From assembly GCA_010909165.1 (NCBI GenBank), contig MU008170.1:744001-808000 (forward strand): a DNA stretch of 64,000 bases. Direction: 5' to 3'. Positions 22,189-31,000 of this stretch are shown here, piece after piece. The first letter of the stretch is position 1. The number at the start of each line of letters is the position of its first letter. Source of the stretch: Anthoceros angustus (lineage: Eukaryota > Plantae > Anthocerotophyta). Under the pieces are notes generated by a model. It had not been told where the DNA came from, did no database searches, and was given only the letters and a program-made list of their open reading frames with translations. Made by a program: the position numbers and the translations under genes.

Positions 22189-25100
22189 ATGAAGAATGCG
22201 GGTCGCAGAGGAGGAGGAGTGATGGAGAGCACGCTCCCTCGCTCCTCGCATTTGGTGTCCGAGATAGAGCTGGTGGACGAGTCGGGGGCCTCGTCCCAGG
22301 TGAATGGCGGGGGCTCGCTGGCCTCGTCCACGGGGCCGGATGTGAGAGCGCACGCCGTGGCCTCGTCCAATTCAGCTGCGCAGAGGAGCTCGGACGCGTC
22401 CACCAGCTTCAAGGGGGAGCCGGGACTGTACAAGAAGGTGCTTTACGTGCCGGGGATTTCTCCCTTCCCGCATTTCCCGACGGGGAGCAAGGCCACTGCG
22501 GAGACAGACGACGGGGCTGGATTGTGCTGCTGCTGCTTGCCCGGGGACGCAGGTCTGGATGGGGCGTCGGGGGGGATGTCTAAGCCGGAAGCCAGTAATA
22601 CAGGGACAAGGAAATCTGATGGGCAGCAGGACGGGGAGCAGGCGCAGGAGCAGGAGGGGGAGATCTTGAGGGGATTTGGGGCGTATTGGAGGGAGTGGGT
22701 GATTGGGTTGCAGAGCAGGACGTTGTATGTGGGTGTGCTCTTGGTGTGGTCTGGGCTGGTGCCTGCTCTGGTTTTCGGGACCTGGATGGGGAGGAAGACC
22801 GGGGGTGCTATTGGGACTGCCGAGGTTTTCATGTCCACCTTGGTGTGCGGGGTTTTGTTTGCGGTTTTCGGGAGGGAGCCTCTGGTGATTGTGGGTGTCA
22901 CTGCTCCGTCGGCTGTGTTTGTGGCCGCAGTTGCAAGCACTGCCAACAGGCTGTCTGTGGGGTTTGTGCCCTGGTTGGGGTGGATAGGCATCTGGTGTGC
23001 GGGAAGCTTGATGATTCTGGCAGTGGCTCATGCCAGTCGAGCTGCGGCGCATCTGAGTAGGTTCAGCTGGGAGGTGTTGCAGGCTTTCGTGGGGTTCACT
23101 TTGCTCTGGGATGGGACTCAGCTGGTTGTGGAGCTTTTCAGACCTGGAGCTCCCTTGGACGCTGCCATTCTCTCCCTCTGGCTTGCAACGTGTACAGTTG
23201 TGTTGGCAACGTTTTTGAGCGGAGCAGCAGGTTGGCAGTACCTGAATAGGGGGTGTTTGGAGGCTATACAGTTTCTTGGTCCGGCATTGACGATGATTCT
23301 CTTCACTGGTATGTGAGAGTCCTTGTCACATGCATTCGCCAGTAGGAGACTTGTTGCTTTTGATGATACGCAGGGAAGGGGTCTAAAGAGCTGCTTCTGC
23401 TGGCTTGTGTGGAATGCAGCGCTTCCACTTCTGCCGTTCCTGTCGCAGCCACAGCTGCTGCGGGTGGAGATGCCGGATCTGCCGTATCACAACAACAGAG
23501 TCTCCAAGTTTGGAGCAGTTGTGAGCTTGAGGGCCCTTCCACTGTGGACCATTTTCCTGGCTTTCATTCCAGGGTCTCTATTGGCCGGGTTGATCTTCTT
23601 CGACCACAATGCATCTGCCCTTTTAGTACAGGTGCGGTAGTCATCCAGGGTGCGCACATGTTTTGGATTCTCCATACTTGGCTCCTTCATCTGAGGGGAG
23701 ATTCTTCGTGTGATGTTCTGGAAGCAGGATGCAAAAGGGAGAAGAGAGTATAATTACAGGTCCAGAAGCTGGGATATGTTTGTGATCGCTGTATCCGTAT
23801 TGCTGTGCAGTTTCTTTGGCCTGCCTTTCAGCTATGGACTATCGACACAGGTGAGACAGTTCGAGCTCACAGATCTTTCGGTTTCTGGTCTGCAGTCCTC
23901 CTTCCAGAGATGTCTTGACCTTCATCCTTCCCTTTGCAGAGCGTTTCGCATGCTCAAGCTCTTGCTTGCAAGAACGGTGCTTGTGATCCGGAGAGCCAGG
24001 AAAAACCTGCGTCTAGAGCACACTACCAGCGTGTCTCCGCGACTATTGTCGCACTATCTTCAGGGATTCTACTTCTCCCAGGGTTGGTGCATCTTGTACG
24101 GAGAATACCACAAGGTGTAATTGCAGGCCTTTGTCTGCAGGTACGTGACATCTATGGTGCTGCACTTGTTGTTAACAGCCTGCGGTGTTTGGACAGCTCA
24201 ATTCCGTGGAGGTCTCTGAGGACCACGGGTCTTTGTGCAGGTCGCCCTCGCTTGCCTCAAGGATCTGACGCTCGTTGAAAGGATCAAATGGTTGTTTGTG
24301 GACTCTGTGAAGAATCCGTCTGCAGCAGAAGGATGCAATCTCACAGTCCGTGTGTACAGTATTGTGCAAGTGTCCTGCATCGTTACCATCTTTGCCGTCA
24401 GCAAAACTGCAGCGGCTCTCCTCTTCCCTCTGTTCTTGCTGGTCACAGTTTGGCTAAGGCACGATGTGTTGCACAACTTCTTCTCCAAGAGAGAGTTCCT
24501 CACCATCGACAAGCGGTTGCTAACAGCGGACATCTTTGAGGGCACAACTGCAAGTCATCCGACGGCCGGCAAGACTTCCAGGCGGCTGCGTAAAGGAGGT
24601 CCTCACTCTCTGAGGAAGTTACTTCGGGACAGAGTGGGTGTGTCGGGCCCGGCCGGAGCCTCCAAACTACACATGCAACTGGACAGTGAGTCTGCCAGGT
24701 CGTGTGAATCACCAGCTTTGCTTGCCATGGCCAGCAAACGGAGACTGAAGGAGAGATCAAGAAGAAGGAACAAGAGGAAGATGTCGCATGGGGCATCATC
24801 CTTTGAGACCACTTCTTCTTCCACCTTCACACTTCCCCTGCAGCCCAGTGACATGATGAAGAAGAAGCAGAAGAGCTCCGCACAGAATTTCAGGCCCAAG
24901 GGCACGCCTCACCATGTCGGTTCCAGATTTGGCAGACAGCAGGCCACTCAGAAGAGCAAACGTCAACAGGGAAGGGTTGGCACAGTCTCTGTTGTGCCGG
25001 GAACAGGCTTGAGTCCGTTCGGAGATAGCAGTTATCTCCCATCTTCTCAGGTGAACTTCTCTCCGAAGTCTAAGCCAATTCAAGAGATGGCGGATGTTCG

Positions 25101-26421
25101 TACTCCCAGGAGCAGGCCGATGGTGACCTTCAAGCCTGAGACTAATAGTCCATTCCATCAGTTTTCACCAAAGATGGAGATACCACTGCCTTCAAATATC
25201 TCCGTGCTCAGACGGACCCTTCCCAGTCCATTCAGACAGGTGTCCCCAAAGTCACAGATGCTGCATGCCAACTCTCTCTTTGACCCTCATTGGAAGGACT
25301 CTTCACCTCCTAACAAAAGCATGCAGGTCCATGAGAACCTGGCCTTCTTAACAGGTGAGGGCCCGGCTGCCAAATTTTCTTCTGGGCAACAGATAGCTGA
25401 AAGAAAGAAGTCTGTTCGATCTCCTAGAAAGTCTCCTCTCACTCTCAGGTTCTCTGCCCCACTCCTACCAAACCAGCCTATGTTGCAGGATCTACAGCGG
25501 CCTTGGGAAATGAGCTCATCTGCATGGACAAGGTCTGCACTCCCTGATCAATTAAGAGCCAGCAGCTTCAGACTGTGCGGTGACGCTCTTTTTAGTACAG
25601 GCGGCAGTGAGATATTGACCCTGGCATTGGCAACGACGGACATGCTTTCAAATGGAGGCAACGAACTCTCGAATACAGAGGACTGGAAAGAGGTCAGCTA
25701 TGTCCAGCCAGATGATCAAGGGGTCTCTTCAACTGCTGATCCACTACGCAGGGAAGCTGGAAGGAGTGAAAGGAGGACTCTGTCAGCCAGCTCTGTGACC
25801 AGTGGAGATCTTCTGCTGGACCCCGAGGAGAAGGGGAGCACTATGGTTCACGGCTGGGAAGCTGTGACCCATCCACCGGCGGAGGTCCGACCAAGCCGAT
25901 TCAAGCTGGCAAGCGAAGTCCTGTATGGAGAGACTTCTGGTAGCAGCTTTCATAGCTTGGAGACTGCCCCCAATGGAGTCCTGAGATTGAGAAGAGAGGA
26001 TGAAAACCGTGCTCTTCTGTCACGCTCGTGGGAAGAGGTTAATTACTCGCCCCATGAGGATTTTGCAGACACCAGTAGCAGTTCCCATCCCCAAGCTGCA
26101 GACGAGCCTTGGGTGTCCCAGCCTCCCAAGCCCAAATCTCGACCTAAAAGGAAGTCTGGCTCAGGCAATGAGTCGCAGCAGGGGACCCAATCATCTACGG
26201 GTCTGCAGCAACAACACCAGCGGCACCCACCCAGCTCAAAACCCCTTCAATGGACTCCTGAGCGGAATACCAGGAACACAAGACTGCGTTCATCATCTTC
26301 GGAGTTCACAGACAACTTTGAAGAGTTAGGGGCTTCCAAGCACCAAAGCCAGCATAAGTTGCCAAAGAGCCCACCGGTAACACATCCTGTCCAGCCTGCT
26401 GATCTCTTGCGGACCCTCTGA
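22189..26421 (+). CDS. Divergent SLC4/BOR-family (HCO3-/borate) anion transporter. Exons 22189-23308, 23420-23631, 23728-23850, 23940-24140, 24241-26421; true start may lie upstream
   Basis: STLVCGVLFAVFGREPLVIVGVTAP, WLGWIGIW, AFIPGSLLAGLIFFDHNASALLVQ, WDMFVIAVSVLLCSFFGLPFSYG, YQRVS and RIPQGV align to BOR1/AE motifs (GGQPL, YFDHSVA, DLLLLG, PPSNG, EQRVS). Splice phases are consistent. A ~620-aa S/K/R/P-rich tail follows. Confidence 0.8.
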
Positions 26422-26710
26422 AATCGATATGGTTCTCATAGTCCATGTATGTGACATGACAGGTCTGGAGATAGCGAGCCACGCATCGTTCTTTTTTCTT
26501 TTGCTGGGCCTTCTGGTCGTGTGCTTGTAACAGTCTCCACAGCATTAGCAAATGCATCCATCGAGAGGTAGAGGAAAGATTCCTCGTCGTGGGTAGGTCA
26601 GAATCCATGCCTCCAGCTTCGGACTCACTGAACCAGCACAGCAACACATCCATTGCTTTCGACTGTTTGGTCCGCAATTTCCAAACCATGTATGCATTGC
26701 TTGCGCATTT

Positions 26711-27829
26711 ATGGAGATGAAGTCATCCTCCTCGCGCAGAGCGCTGGCCATTCTGCACCACGTGCATCCTCCCGCCCCGTCGTCTCCAACTCGTTTTCTG
26801 TCGCCCACAAATGCGAGCTCCGTCGGAAGTGGCAGGGTGGCTGAGTATGGAGCTGGTGAACAACCTCCACAGCGTGACGGTGGCCTTGCGGATGCTGTCA
26901 CCTCTGGGAAGCAGGAAGAGCAGAAGCCGAGGAAGAAAAAGGTGGTGCTGGTGATCGGGGCCGGGGACGCGACTGGCGGGGCTGTGTCTCGCAGGTTTGC
27001 CAGGGAGGGTTTTGTGGCGTGTGTGGTGAGGAGACATGCGGATGCACTGCAAGGGCTTGTGGAAGAGATCCGGCATGAGGGGGGAGAGGCTGTGGCATAC
27101 GGAGTGGATGCTCGCAAAGAAGGTATGTATGTCGTGTAAGATCTGTTTTGGCAGACATGGACTGCCGGGATTCACAGCTGTGTTGACACGGGCTCACGGC
27201 AGAGGATGTGGTTGCTTTGGTCGAGGGGATCGAGGCTGAGGTTGGGGAAATCCATGTGGCTGTGTTCAACATCGGAGCTAACGTGAATTTCAGCATTCTG
27301 GACACCACTGCTCGAGTCTATTTCAAGGTAAGGGTAGCACTAGAGTGCTCTACCCAACTTGTGTGGCAATCAAGCAATTCTTCTTGTCCAGCAACCGAGA
27401 GAGCGCTGGGACTGCATCCAGGTGTGGGAGATGGCCTGCTTTTCAGGCTTTTTGATGGGGCGTGAAGTAGCCAAGCACATGGTGAAGCGGGAGCAAGGAA
27501 CCATCATCTTTACTGGTGCAACAGCCAGCTTGCGAGGTGGAACAGGGTATGCTGCATTCGCAGGAGCCAAGTTTGCGTTGAGGGCCTTGGCACAAAGCAT
27601 GGCAAGGGAACTAGGACCCAAGGGCATTCACGTTGCTCATGTCGTCGTCGATGCGGCTATTCTCACTTCCTGGACGCTGGAAAACGTCAAGAATGCCAAG
27701 GCAGCAAATTCCAGGCAAGGGTTGGTGATCCCGCAGGACATCGCTGAAGCATATTGGCAGCTGCATGTGCAGACGAAGACGGCATGGACCCATGAACTCG
27801 ACCTCAGACCCTGGATCGAACCATGGTGA
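26711..27829 (+). CDS. Short-chain dehydrogenase/reductase, bacterial-like. Exons 26711-27122, 27203-27327, 27422-27829
   Basis: VVLVIGAGDATGGAVSRRFAREG (Rossmann fold), DARKEEDV, FNIGAN, IIFTGATASLRG, AAFAGAKFALRALAQSMARELGP and WTHELDLRPW. Both introns are GT-AG and in phase. Confidence 0.9.
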
Positions 27830-28063
27830 AAAGTTGGCGTTTGTGTCCAAATCCAGTGCTGTCACATGTTTTTACACAGAATTAAATAGTTGAAAAGCGT
27901 GTTAAATAATGCTTATATGGACGCATACCCGGGATGTGCGCAAGCCTCCAGACGAGTTCTTATAACCATCCATCCACCATGTCTCAGTTTGGAGGAGGAT
28001 GCAGTTAAGCAAGCACATTCACCCCAACAAAGCAATAGCTCTGGCGGCTTTCTTCCATTATCC

Positions 28064-31000
28064 TCACGGTCTACCCTTACAACTGCAACAACCAGCTGCA
28101 AATCGATGCACACGGTAACCATCCCTTACGACAATGTCTCTCTGTTCAAGTCTTGACATGATCTCCGTGGAACTGTGGCAATCACTGCACATGCGTAGAT
28201 TCTTAGTTACCACCAGAGGTGTCCCACTCAGGTGTTCAAGAGACCAAACGCCAGAGCTAGCTTCTCAGCATGCCCACAAAGCATCTTCCTTTTCCTTCTC
28301 ACAGTGGTCTTCAACACCAGGTTTGTGTGAGGTACGTGGCCTCCTTCCTGCTTTACACGTGAATTCATGCTCTCTACCTTAAGTGCAATATCCTCTCTCC
28401 TTTCTCCCACCAGAAATTCATGTACCTCCTTATTCACCTCAATGCTCGCCACTGCAGGTTTCTTGTTAGCTCCAGCTACCGTTCTCTGTGTTTCAATCCT
28501 GTCTACATCGGCCCACCTACCTGCATCTGCATAGGCATTGGCCATGAGCACGTAGGCGGGTGCCTCCTGGGGGTCCAGCCTAACAATGCTTTCAAAACAC
28601 CATTTAGCCCTCTCTATATCTCCGTGACTTTTGCAGGCATTCAACAAAGACGTCAAGCCCACAACATTGCTTTGGCCCTCGCATGATAAGAGCATCTTCT
28701 CTGCCTCGTCTAAATGGCCAGCACGCCCAAGAAGATCAATCATGCAGGTGTAATGCTCAATAGTAGGTTTGATGCCATGCTGTTGAGCCATAGAATCAAA
28801 GTGCTTGAAACCCTCGTGGACCAGTCCCTCATGACTGCATGCTACTAAAAGGCAAGTAAAAGTAACATCATTAGGCTGAATACCGGCAACTAACATATCC
28901 TCAAAACAAGCTATTGCTTTGAGACCTTCATCACAAGTCCCATAGCCAGCTATCATGGCATTCCATGTGACCACATCCTTTGTGACCATGCTGTCAAACA
29001 CCTGGCGTGCATCCTCCAGTTCACCACAGTTTGCATACATGTCTACCAGGCCGTTCCCCAGAACTACGTTATCCAGCAGTCCTCTTTCGACAATCTCAGA
29101 GTGCAGCTGCCTGCCCTTCTGTAAGGCACCAGTGCTTGCACAGGCCTTCAAAAGGCAAGCAAATGTAACATGGTCAGCTAAAATGAGGCCCTCCTGCTCC
29201 ATTTGTCCATACAGAACAATTGCCTCATGTCCCAGTCCTTGCTGGGCATACCCAGCTATTAGGGCATTCCATGTCACCACATCCTTGGTGGCCATGCTGT
29301 CAAAAACCTGGCGTGCATCTTTCAGCTCACCACATTTTGCATACAGATATCAGGGCATTCCATGTCACCACATCCTTTGTGGCCAAGCTGTCAAAAACCC
29401 GGCGTGCAGCTTCCAGTTCGCCACATTTAGCATACATGTCCACCAGGCAGTTGCCCACAAGTACGTTATCCCGCAGTCCTCTTTCAACAATCTGTGAGTG
29501 CAGCTGCCTGCCCTTCTGTAAGGCACCAGTGCTTGCACAGGCCTTCAGAAGGCAAGCAAATGTGACATGGTCAGCCAAAATGAGGCCCTCCTGCTCCATT
29601 TGTCCATACAGAACTAGGGCCTCATGTCCGAGTCCCTGCTGGGCGTACCCGGCTATCAGGGCAGTCCATGTCACCACATCCTTTGTGTTCATTTTGTCAA
29701 AAACCTGGCGTGCATCTTTCAGTTCACCACATTTTGCATACCCAGATATCAGGGCATTCCATGTCACCACATCCTTTTTGGCCATGCTGTCAAAAACCTG
29801 GCGTGCTTCTTTCAGTTCGCAACATTTTGCGTACATGTCCACCAGACAGTTGCCAACAAACAAGTTAGTAGGAATGCCGCTGTGCAACACATCACAGTGC
29901 ACTTTTCTGCCAGATTCCAAGTCGGTGGCAAATGCACAAGCTTGAAGTGCAGCTACAAAGACGTGGGCATCCGCCTTCACTCCTGACCTACGCATCTCAT
30001 GGTAGAGTTGTACGGCCTCGTTAGGTTTCCCATGCTTAGCATATGCAGAGATGATGGAAGACCACGTGAAAGCATCTGGTTTGCCCACCCTGGAGAACAC
30101 ATCCATAACCTCCTGCAGACTACCTCCACATGCATACATGCGCAAGATATGGTTCCCCAAGTACGCATTCGACTCGAACCCAAGTTTGGCAGTGAGATCA
30201 TGAACTCGGCGCCCCACAACCAAATCCTTCTTAGCTGTACACAGTTTCAGCACAGTGCAAAACAGAGACTGCGAAATAGCGGAGTCTGTCTGAGCCAGAG
30301 ATTCCAGGGCTCCAATGGCCTCAGAAAGCTTCCCCTGCTGACATAACGTGCTCACGGTTACAGCCGTAACCACGCCCATTCCCGATCCTTCACGCCTGCC
30401 AGGTTCAGGCTTATTCGGACAGCTCACCTTGGAGGGAGAGGCACCATGACCCATCTGCATATCCAAGCAAACGAGCTGCTCATCAACCCAAGCTGGCTTA
30501 AACATGTGGTTCAACCACAGCACCTCGCCGGACCCCTTACGCCGGAAGTCAGGCGAACGGGATGTCTTCTTATCTCGTCTGTTGTCCCACCACATGGTAG
30601 GGTCCAGAAAAAATTGCTGCCACAAGTGCTCCTGCTCCTCGCAACGACCATCGCTGGAAACCCCGTCCCCACCCACACACTTTCTCGGGACTGGGAGTGC
30701 TGGGCTCCTTACACTGCTGCACCTGGAGGCCTTGTTTGCCAAGGTTTGACTCCCTAAGATGAGGTGCGCGGGAGCTCCTCTTGGAATCCCTGTACACACA
30801 CCAATTTGTTGGGCCCGCAACGGGTCCGGCTGCCATACTGTGGCCATCGTTCAGGGACTGCTGTCGGAGGATGAGTCTAACAACAGACTATGGCAGCATG
30901 CCCAGGTACAGTGTTTGACCACACCAAACGGGCGTGTAGGCAGGTTGGAGGTGCATGGACAAGAAAGCTGTGCTCAGGACCTGGCAAAATGCTGCAGCAT

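What the first reader, a model, noticed from the sequence alone, without database searches (positions are those of the whole stretch)
26711..27829. Candidate bacteria-to-plant horizontal transfer: intron-containing SDR with a PTS2-like leader
Seen: the core runs nearly motif-for-motif with a proteobacterial SDR family as I recall it (GAGDATGGA, RRFAREG, DARKEEDV, FNIGAN, WEMACFSGFL, GATASLRG, QSMARELGP, ELDLRPW). It has two clean GT-AG introns and sits between plant genes, which argues against contamination. The ~75-aa leader contains RALAILHHV, resembling a peroxisomal PTS2 (R[LIA]x5H[LV]). Inference: a domesticated HGT gene retargeted to peroxisomes.
Basis: partly seen in the sequence, partly recalled or inferred. 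Interest (0 to 1): 0.75.

Follow-up and report, generated by a model that had tools for sequence, protein, structure and literature searches.

The report
Bacterial-origin reductase gene with peroxisome tag
A real, spliced and expressed gene of a hornwort-like plant encodes an enzyme-like protein of clearly bacterial type, but mosses share it, so the transfer from bacteria is ancient and apparently already reported for a moss; the new point is that its added front end carries a peroxisome import signal.

Summary
RNA-like contigs of three related organisms splice at both predicted GT-AG introns. The neighbours are plant genes: a BOR-like transporter upstream and a PPR-DYW gene downstream.

The core is 70-72% identical to proteobacterial proteins, and its only close solved structure is PDB 3h7a. 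It is 46-52% identical to the diatom and picoeukaryote homologues.

It is not a hornwort novelty. Physcomitrium patens (XP_024372720.1) and a moss-like environmental sequence are orthologues. They form one clade with the two hornwort-type sequences (support 100/94). The moss gene shares both hornwort introns at the same place and phase. The transfer therefore predates the moss-hornwort split. Yue et al. 2012 list what is probably this moss gene as a proteobacterial transfer.

The peroxisome idea gains support. The moss orthologues carry canonical PTS2 signals (RLx5HL, RIx5HL) at the aligned position of the hornwort RAx5HV and RTx5HV.

Caveats:
- An AU test does not reject a single eukaryotic clade (p 0.34).
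- Presence in other plant groups could not be checked.
- The family lacks the classical catalytic Ser and Tyr, and its substrate is unknown.

The parts
26475..26710 (+). transcribed stretch between the stop of the upstream BOR-like gene (26472-26474) and the SDR start codon; likely the 5' UTR
   Evidence: One contig of the window's own species covers 26462-27120 without a break (table 8). The upstream stop was computed.
26711..27122 (+). exon 1: leader (residues 1-75) plus the first 62 residues of the Rossmann fold (GxGxxxG at residues 83-89; Arg107-Arg108 after strand 2, the NADP(H)-type signature)
   Evidence: Translation; Pfam adh_short on residues 77-136; column conservation.
26738..26764 (+). 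PTS2-like nonapeptide RALAILHHV (residues 10-18): R at position 1, Ile at position 5, His at position 8, Val at position 9
   Evidence: It aligns with RLNRIMRHL of P. patens, RISCIMRHL of P0471 and RTLVIFGHV of L081.
27123..27202 (+). intron 1, 80 nt, GT-AG, phase 1, inside DARKE|E
   Evidence: Joint 27120>27201 (cut +2) in runs X1, X2 and X12. P. patens intron 2 has the same place and phase.
27203..27327 (+). exon 2, 125 nt (NIGAN cofactor-site motif)
   Evidence: The matching P. patens exon is also 125 nt.
27328..27421 (+). intron 2, 94 nt, GT-AG, phase 0, between K179 and V180 (K|VWEMACF)
   Evidence: Joint 27325>27420 (cut +2) in X1, X2 and X12. P. patens intron 3 has the same place and phase.
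27422..27829 (+). exon 3 with the stop codon: substrate-side half of the SDR fold. It holds GATASxRG, Phe225 at the classical Tyr site, Lys229, IHVAH, Asp256 and the C-terminal AWTHELDLRPWIEPW
   Evidence: PDB 3h7a at E 1.3e-43; 61-71% identity to proteobacterial loci; conservation; alignment to FabG.
27830..28094 (+). 3' UTR as far as one contig of the same species reaches; it runs into the 3' end of the convergent PPR-DYW gene
   Evidence: Run X1, record 3, covers 27420-28094 with no differences (table 8).

Best explanation
This is a functional nuclear gene of a hornwort-like land plant. It descends from a proteobacterial gene of the 3h7a-like SDR family. The gene entered the plant lineage before mosses and hornworts diverged. 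It then gained spliceosomal introns, two of which both lineages still share, and a new N-terminal leader of 50-100 residues. It has been inherited vertically since. The only conserved element of the leader is a nonapeptide near the N-terminus. In mosses it is a canonical PTS2 (RLx5HL, RIx5HL). In the hornwort-type sequences it is a near-consensus variant (RAx5HV, RTx5HV). The most likely working is therefore recognition by PEX7 in the cytosol and import into the peroxisomal matrix. A C-terminal PTS1 was probably not an option, because the last residues (E312, W314) are invariant or nearly so across the family. Inside the organelle the protein most likely acts as an NADP(H)-dependent reductase with an unusual active site: Ala and Phe stand at the classical Ser and Tyr positions, Lys is kept, and His249, His252 and Asp256 are invariant. 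In bacteria the gene pairs with a DSBA/HCCA-isomerase-like (GST-kappa-like) gene under HxlR or TetR regulators. That context points to detoxification of an electrophilic carbonyl, quinone or enoyl compound. Shown here: the gene model, its expression and splicing, the homology, the plant clade, the shared introns and the motif alignment. Inferred: the direction and date of transfer, peroxisomal import, the cofactor and the substrate class.
For: Gene model and splicing. Plant neighbours and synteny. Core 70-72% identical to bacterial proteins but 46-52% to the diatom and picoeukaryote homologues. About 500 bacterial loci were found, the best being Alpha-, Beta- and Gammaproteobacteria. Careful ML tree: plants (2 hornwort-type, P. 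patens, P0471) form one clade at 100/94 and the algal eukaryotes a separate clade at 100/100. P. patens orthologue XP_024372720.1. Two introns identical in place and phase, and the exon between them 125 nt in both. PTS2: strict-consensus matches at residues 9-17 of both moss-type sequences, aligned with the hornwort nonapeptides, in leaders that otherwise share little; shuffled leaders match the strict pattern in 0.6-1.6% of cases and the relaxed pattern in 2-5%. The consensus [RK]-[LVI]-x5-[HQ]-[LAF], the first-40-residue rule and the hydrophobic position 5 come from PMC7710942. RAx5HI (ACX3, ACX6), RAx5HL, RLx5HI and RVx5HF are listed for the Arabidopsis/rice reference peroxisome proteome, rice entries being in-silico orthologue predictions (PMC3355810). 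NADP-type Arg-Arg and the family invariants. Ser>Ala and Tyr>Phe by alignment to FabG. SDR-DSBA pairing in 63 of 76 loci, with HxlR or TetR upstream. Prior report of a proteobacterial SDR transfer in P. patens: PMC3493653 Table 1.
Against: The AU test does not reject a tree in which plants and the algal eukaryotes form one clade (lnL difference 12.3, p 0.338). No branch between the plant clade and the base of the family is strongly supported in the careful tree, so the donor cannot be named beyond Proteobacteria. Presence or absence in liverworts, vascular plants and streptophyte algae was not established: the protein database holds few hornwort ORFs, not even the window's own, so blanks mean little. 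The hornwort nonapeptide fails the strict PTS2 consensus at positions 2 and 9. Val at position 9 appears only in a predicted oomycete case. The Cys that usually marks the PTS2 cleavage site is absent from both hornwort leaders. No localisation or enzyme data exist. Without the classical Ser and Tyr the protein might not be a reductase at all.
Confidence: 0.6

Rival explanations
1. The gene is an old eukaryotic gene, for example from the alphaproteobacterial ancestor of mitochondria or a very early transfer. It was inherited vertically and lost from most lineages, so bryophytes and stramenopile algae hold remnants of one acquisition.
For: Homologues with N-terminal extensions exist in diatoms (MMETSP Leptocylindrus, Extubocellulus) and on a compact eukaryotic contig beside TFIIS, La and Arf genes. 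The AU test does not reject one clade of all these with the plants (p 0.338). Several of the nearest bacterial sequences are alphaproteobacterial.
Against: The free ML trees separate the two eukaryotic groups, each with full support. Plant cores are 70% identical to bacteria but about 50% to the algal group. Known eukaryotic holders are few and scattered. Yue et al. found no Arabidopsis homologue. The leaders are unrelated, and the algal ones have no PTS2.
Confidence: 0.12
2. The bacterial origin holds, but the leader is a mitochondrial or plastid presequence, or is dual-targeting. The PTS2-like nonapeptide of the hornwort is a decayed or chance feature, so the hornwort protein is not peroxisomal.
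For: RAx5HV and RTx5HV fail the strict consensus at two positions. The leader is Ser/Pro/Arg-rich at its start, as transit peptides are. A relaxed match arises in 4% of shuffled leaders. No cleavage-site Cys follows the motif. In L081 the motif lies at residues 37-45 counted from the first ATG.
Against: The nonapeptide block RRxxxIxxH[LV]H is the only strongly conserved part of four otherwise poorly alignable leaders. Both moss-type sequences meet the strict consensus at residues 9-17. Position 5 is Ile in all four. RAx5HI is listed for the Arabidopsis peroxisomal proteins ACX3 and ACX6, and it differs from the hornwort motif only by Ile to Val.
Confidence: 0.25
3. A recent transfer specific to this plant's lineage, which is how the first reader's wording can be read.
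For: 70-72% identity to living bacteria. Only one hornwort-type fragment turned up in the big protein searches.
Against: The moss orthologue has two introns at identical place and phase, and a homologous leader. The plant clade has 100/94 support. GC3 is 0.60, against 0.56 and 0.49 for the neighbouring genes. The family evolves slowly everywhere: hornwort to moss is also only 70%.
Confidence: 0.02
4. Bacterial contamination or a mis-assembly in the plant genome.
For: Very high similarity to bacterial proteins.
Against: Two spliceosomal introns are removed in RNA-like contigs of three organisms. One contig links the gene to the upstream plant gene. Synteny holds in a second species. A eukaryote-type leader is absent from all bacterial homologues.
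Confidence: 0.01

Closest known systems
PDB 3h7a, 'short chain dehydrogenase', 252 aa (a structural-genomics entry; I know of no published function)
   Same: Same family. Exon 3 alone matches at E 1.3e-43 and a family profile at E 1.3e-101. It has the same GATASLRG, Phe at the Tyr site, Lys, IHVAH and C-terminal motif.
   Different: It is bacterial, with no leader and no introns. The next best solved structures fall to E 1e-27 and are generic SDRs.
[quoted passage not shown] 2012, Table 1
   Same: Orthologue: 70% identity in the core, two shared introns, a homologous leader with the signal at the same place, and the same C-terminus.
   Different: The moss gene has two further introns (one in the leader, one in GYAAFA|GAK) and a canonical RLx5HL, where the window has RAx5HV. 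I could not confirm that it is the very gene of Yue's Figure S28, because the supplement is not held.
Plant peroxisomal PTS2 proteins (thiolase KAT2, ACX3, pMDH, citrate synthase and others)
   Same: An N-terminal nonapeptide within the first 40 residues, with Arg at position 1, a hydrophobic residue at position 5 and His at position 8. Ala at position 2 also occurs in ACX3 and ACX6 (RAx5HI).
   Different: Val at position 9 is not among the listed plant variants. No Cys cleavage motif follows in the hornwort. The known plant peroxisomal SDRs (IBR1/SDRa, DECR/SDRb, SDRc-j) all use PTS1 and are unrelated subfamilies (PMC10288848).
Classical SDRs such as FabG (3-oxoacyl-ACP reductase)
   Same: The Rossmann fold, the Gly-rich motif, the NxGxN region and the Lys of YxxxK. 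Pfam adh_short and adh_short_C2 both hit.
   Different: The catalytic Ser is Ala212 and the catalytic Tyr is an invariant Phe225. No NCBIfam model reaches its cut-off.
Diatom and picoeukaryote homologues (the P0165, P0187 and P0191 group)
   Same: The same family, nuclear, with an added N-terminal extension.
   Different: A separate clade (100/100), only 46-52% identical, with long presequence-like leaders and no PTS2. Diatoms are reported to lack the PTS2 pathway (title of PMC3178647 and text of PMC7710942).

Membership tests
SDR superfamily (Pfam PF00106 adh_short) | Profile match above Pfam's gathering score | tested here: met
   Exon 1 piece 29.7 bits and exon 3 piece 53.6 bits, against a cut-off of 26.6. 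The moss orthologue scores 122.6 bits.
SDR superfamily, classical type | Gly-rich cofactor motif TGxxxGxG at the N-terminus of the fold | tested here: met
   GAGDATGG at residues 83-90. G83, G85 and G89 are conserved in 84-86 of 87 rows.
SDR superfamily, classical type | Catalytic Ser ... Tyr-x-x-x-Lys | tested here: not met
   HMMER alignment to FabG 3tzh puts Ala212 at the Ser position and Phe225 at the Tyr position; only Lys229 is kept. Phe225 is present in 87 of 87 rows and Ala212 in 87 of 87. Tyr222, which would give a FabI-like Yx6K, is Phe in 64 of 87 rows.
3h7a-like proteobacterial SDR family (no curated name) | Full-length similarity and the family invariants (GATASxRG, F225, K229, IHVAH, D256, Q296, W301, E304, R308, E312) | tested here: met
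   70-72% identity over 238 residues. All the invariants are present. The profile hits 3h7a at E 1e-101.
PTS2-targeted peroxisomal matrix proteins | Nonapeptide [RK]-[LVI]-x5-[HQ]-[LAF] within the first ~40 residues | tested here: not met
   The window has RALAILHHV (residues 10-18), with Ala at position 2 and Val at position 9. The feature is met by the orthologues P0512 (RLNRIMRHL) and P0471 (RISCIMRHL), both at residues 9-17.
PTS2-targeted peroxisomal matrix proteins | Hydrophobic residue at position 5, and conservation of the nonapeptide among orthologues | tested here: met
   Ile at position 5 in all four plant sequences. The block aligns while the rest of the leaders barely does.
PTS2-targeted peroxisomal matrix proteins | PEX7-dependent import and DEG15 processing at a Cys-containing site | not testable with these tools
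   There is no Cys in the hornwort leaders and one (Cys36) in P. patens. Import needs experiments.
Horizontally acquired plant nuclear genes | Resident in the host genome: introns, host neighbours, expression, orthologues in relatives | tested here: met
Horizontally acquired plant nuclear genes | Recipient clade nested among donor sequences, apart from other eukaryotes | tested here: inconclusive
   The ML trees nest the plants among Proteobacteria and apart from the algal clade. The backbone is weak, and the AU test does not reject one eukaryotic clade (p 0.338).
Horizontally acquired plant nuclear genes | Absence from the sister and outgroup lineages of the recipient | tested here: inconclusive
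   Only hornwort-type and moss-type sequences were found. The databases reachable here cover plants poorly. Yue et al. report no Arabidopsis homologue.

The most novel reading that the evidence does not exclude
A bacterial detoxification-type reductase, from an uncharacterised SDR family that works without the classical Ser-Tyr pair, was captured by the ancestor of bryophytes. It was sent into peroxisomes by a PTS2 that evolved from scratch on a new N-terminal leader, because its invariant C-terminus could not take a PTS1. The hornwort R[AT]x5HV form would then be a working PTS2 variant not yet on the plant list. This would be a bryophyte-specific peroxisomal function that searches starting from Arabidopsis have missed.
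Probability: 0.4. Interest if true: 0.55.

Novelty: new member of a known kind. Interest (0 to 1): 0.4.

Why it matters
Transfer of bacterial genes into early land plants is already established, and this family was probably on the 2012 moss list, so the transfer itself adds little. Three things are new.

First, the shared introns and the plant clade date the acquisition to before the moss-hornwort split.

Second, the acquired gene has a conserved PTS2-type signal. This gives a simple, testable case of how a foreign enzyme is wired into an organelle. It also shows a peroxisomal SDR candidate that surveys starting from Arabidopsis, which found only PTS1 proteins, could not find.

Third, the parent family is widespread in Proteobacteria, has one orphan crystal structure and lacks the textbook catalytic residues. 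It is therefore an open biochemical problem with a tractable moss knockout system.

Tried and rejected
- Profile search (alignment A1). It returned only bacterial-length proteins, because the bacterial row dominated the profile. It gave no information on plants.
- Search with the diatom protein. It showed the algal group but no plants.
- Scan of JGI metagenome contigs with the moss protein. All 80 best loci were bacterial-grade (at most 67% identity), with no further plant orthologues.
- ESM Atlas look-alikes. Only bacterial SDR clusters came up, which is uninformative on distribution.
- NCBIfam. No model reached its cut-off, so no name beyond 'SDR family oxidoreductase' can be given.
- Supplements of Yue 2012 and of the 2025 bryophyte pangenome paper are not held. 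The supplement of the A. angustus genome paper mentions only unrelated tandem SDRs. I therefore could not confirm gene identifiers in the published transfer lists.
- FabI-like Yx6K active site. Rejected, because Tyr222 is Phe in 64 of 87 family members.
- Fusion of the SDR ORF with the upstream ORF. Rejected: after splicing, the upstream gene stops at 26472-26474, 236 nt before the SDR ATG, and is in another frame.
- Structure prediction. Not run: a close solved structure exists, and the spliced window protein cannot be passed by reference.
- The full 314-aa protein was never sent to the protein searches, because it has no reference. Exon pieces and orthologue ids were used instead.

Full report
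**1. What is in the sequence**

Reading 26300-28300 and splicing by hand gives three exons on the + strand: 26711-27122, 27203-27327 and 27422-27829. The two GT-AG introns are 80 and 94 nt long. DARKEEDV spans intron 1. RALAILHHV lies at residues 10-18. The exon pieces hit Pfam adh_short above its cut-off. No NCBIfam model reaches its own cut-off.

**2. Is the gene real and plant-borne**

I laid contigs of four public runs on 26200-28400.
- The window's own species (X1, no differences) and two related organisms (X2, X12, about 91-95% alike) each have contigs that skip exactly the two predicted introns (80 and 94 nt, GT..AG).
- A fourth run (X18) holds the unspliced DNA form.
- One X1 contig runs from the upstream gene, through that gene's own spliced 86-nt intron (26377-26462), into SDR exons 1 and 2.
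- After splicing, the upstream ORF stops at 26472-26474, which is 236 nt before the SDR ATG. These are therefore two genes whose transcripts abut or overlap.

The upstream ORF is the C-terminal part of an HCO3_cotransp (BOR-like) transporter. The downstream ORFs on the minus strand are PPR/E/DYW proteins. A Logan contig from another run (L081) carries the same pair, HCO3_cotransp then SDR. Its exons are about 80% identical in DNA, its introns (106 and 140 nt) sit at the same two places, and it gives a 337-aa product. Contamination is excluded. No tool names the organism. The DYW-type neighbour, the short introns, the sister position to mosses in the tree and other agents' notes point to a hornwort.

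**3. Relatives**

- Exon 3 alone matches PDB 3h7a at E 1.3e-43, while all other solved structures are at E 1e-7 or worse.
- A family profile gives E 1e-101 for 3h7a, against 1e-27 for the next structure.
- A scan of one genome per bacterial species found more than 500 loci. The best 80 are 61-71% identical over exon 3 and are mostly Alpha-, Beta- and Gammaproteobacteria.
- The full core (residues 76-314) is 70-72% identical to many 241-248-aa bacterial proteins.
- The exhaustive representative search found 106 clusters at E below 1e-30. Only one was hornwort-like (P0001, 87% identical, the exon 3 ORF of L081).

Some hits have long N-terminal extensions. These are diatom transcripts (Leptocylindrus, Extubocellulus) and proteins from compact eukaryotic contigs that lie beside TFIIS, La and Arf genes. 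The hornwort core is only 46-52% identical to them.

**4. Moss orthologues**

I searched with the hornwort exon 3 via P0001. The best non-self hit is P0424 (73% identical). Its 90% cluster contains Physcomitrium patens XP_024372720.1 (P0512, 300 aa). P0471 (289 aa, from a JGI metagenome, 84% identical to the moss core) is a second moss-type sequence.

I mapped a P. patens mRNA contig onto the genomic locus. The gene has four introns. The second (VDARKE|E, phase 1) and the third (K|VWEMACF, phase 0) coincide in place and phase with the two hornwort introns. The exon between them is 125 nt in both species. The gene was therefore already nuclear and intron-bearing in the common ancestor of mosses and hornworts.

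**5. Phylogeny**

- A quick tree of 118 rows put the two hornwort-type sequences inside a 43-row, mostly proteobacterial set (SH-aLRT 98). The diatom and picoeukaryote sequences fell in a separate clade (97).
- A careful tree of 87 rows and 243 columns (LG+C20+F+G4 PMSF) gives plants (two hornwort-type, P. patens, P0471) as one clade at 100/94. The algal eukaryotes form another clade at 100/100. Plants sit among Proteobacteria.
- The branches between those clades are weak. An AU test does not reject a tree that holds plants and algal eukaryotes together (lnL difference 12.3, p 0.338).

Bacterial ancestry is clear: the family is huge and has a conserved operon context in bacteria, while its eukaryotic holders are few. 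Independence from the algal acquisition is favoured but not proven. The donor cannot be narrowed beyond Proteobacteria.

Rows left out of the second tree: distant long-branch clusters, near-duplicates of the algal group, and the two far outgroups of the first tree.

**6. Prior knowledge**

Yue et al. 2012 (PMC3493653, Table 1) list 'Short-chain dehydrogenase/reductase SDR', donor Proteobacteria, no Arabidopsis homologue, among 57 families acquired by P. patens. The UniRef name of P0512 is the same phrase. I could not open their Figure S28 to confirm the identifier.

The A. angustus genome paper says two bacterial transfers are shared by all three bryophyte groups, and this SDR is not among the transferred genes named in its main text; the full list (Supplementary Table 31) was not seen. 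A 2023 survey of plant peroxisomal SDRs started from Arabidopsis proteins and retrieved only PTS1 proteins in the moss (PMC10288848). I found no paper on a PTS2 in this protein.

**7. The leader**

Bacterial homologues start 3-8 residues before the Gly motif. The plant proteins add 51-98 residues. The four leaders align poorly except for one block:
- window: RRALAILHHVHP
- L081: RRTLVIFGHVHP
- P. patens: RRLNRIMRHLHS
- P0471: RRISCIMRHLHP

The strict PTS2 consensus is [RK]-[LVI]-x5-[HQ]-[LAF], within 40 residues of the N-terminus and with a hydrophobic position 5 (PMC7710942). Both moss-type sequences meet it at residues 9-17. The hornwort-type sequences do not: they have Ala or Thr at position 2 and Val at position 9.

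Variants listed for peroxisomal proteins in the Arabidopsis/rice reference proteome (rice entries are in-silico orthologue predictions) include RAx5HI (ACX3, ACX6), RAx5HL, RQx5HL, RMx5HL, RVx5HF and RLx5HI (PMC3355810). The window's RAx5HV is one conservative change (Ile to Val) from the ACX3 signal.

Shuffled leaders give a strict match in 0.6-1.6% of cases and a relaxed match in 2-5%. Four aligned matches in otherwise drifting leaders are not chance.

The family's C-terminus is fixed: E312 is present in 87 of 87 rows, and position 314 is Trp or Phe in 86 of 87. This would explain why a C-terminal PTS1 did not evolve. That is an inference by analogy with the HIUase case discussed in PMC7710942.

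The algal homologues have presequence-like leaders without a PTS2. In organism B the first ATG reads CTG, so Met3 would start the protein and the signal would move to residues 8-16.

**8. What the protein may do**

The Gly motif, and Arg107-Arg108 after the second strand (81 and 86 of 87 rows), are the NADP(H)-type signature of classical SDRs. That reading rests on established SDR knowledge, with conservation.

The classical catalytic Ser aligns with Ala212 and the Tyr with Phe225. Both are invariant in the family. Only Lys229 remains. Other invariant residues are GATASxRG, His249, His252, Asp256 and the C-terminal AWTxExDxRP block. The chemistry must therefore differ from textbook SDRs.

In bacteria a DSBA-family gene (PF01323, the HCCA-isomerase/GST-kappa kind) follows on the same strand within 400 nt in 63 of 76 loci. 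A divergent HxlR regulator (Pyruvatibacter, Marinobacter, Parvibaculum, Psychrobacter) or a TetR regulator (Ralstonia) often sits upstream. Regulators of the HxlR type commonly control electrophile and quinone detoxification genes; this is my own knowledge. My best guess is an NADPH-dependent reduction of an electrophilic carbonyl, quinone or enoyl compound. I hold it with low confidence.

**9. Verdict**

- The transfer reading is right in kind but wrong in scope. The transfer is ancient, shared with mosses and probably already published for the moss.
- The PTS2 reading is the more interesting part and is strengthened by the orthologues, but it remains untested. The hornwort signal is off-consensus.
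- Distribution outside mosses and hornworts is the main open point, and it could not be settled with the databases at hand.

Noticed in passing
window 24235-26474 (+): C-terminal part of a BOR-like HCO3_cotransp transporter with a Ser/Pro-rich tail of about 600 residues. Its last intron (26377-26462, 86 nt, GT-AG) is spliced in contigs of two organisms, and the stop is at 26472-26474. One RNA-like contig continues from it into the SDR gene, so there is either read-through or overlapping UTRs.
   Followed up: partly
window 28050-28400: Summed contig depth rises 1,000- to 10,000-fold over the C-terminal DYW-type domain of the PPR gene, with hundreds of partly matching contigs and many joints in all four runs. 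This is the signature of a very large paralogous family sharing the domain, not of high expression.
   Followed up: no
window 27830-28094: The SDR 3' UTR contig of the same species reaches 28094, inside the last coding part of the convergent PPR-DYW gene (its GRP-ending ORF spans 28064-28213). The two transcripts would overlap tail to tail by about 30 nt.
   Followed up: no
bacterial loci L001-L080, L088-L092: The 3h7a-like SDR family has Ala and Phe at the classical catalytic Ser and Tyr positions in every member examined. It is paired with a DSBA/HCCA-isomerase-like gene in 63 of 76 loci, often under a divergent HxlR or TetR regulator. It is a widespread two-gene module with no assigned function.
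   Followed up: partly
P0021 (loci L093, L094): A homologue on short AT-rich environmental contigs has an N-terminal RINRLLSQI (residues 3-11, a relaxed PTS2 pattern). It also has an in-frame insert of about 30 residues before the conserved RPYxE end that looks like an unspliced intron. It may be another eukaryotic holder of the family.
   Followed up: partly
window 26711: In the related organism B (runs X2, X18) the first ATG of the SDR ORF reads CTG. The start there would be the Met that is residue 3 in the window.
   Followed up: no
window 26378-26563 and 27827-27977: In the related organisms the intergenic stretch and the start of the 3' UTR are replaced by unrelated letters (85 and 142 letters between the joints), while the coding exons are kept. 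These are ordinary fast-evolving non-coding flanks.
   Followed up: no
L082 (ENA contig of 1.18 Mb): The algal homologue P0191 lies on a compact, apparently intron-poor eukaryotic contig between TFIIS and La-domain genes. The organism was not identified. If it were a green alga, it would bear on the vertical-descent rival.
   Followed up: no
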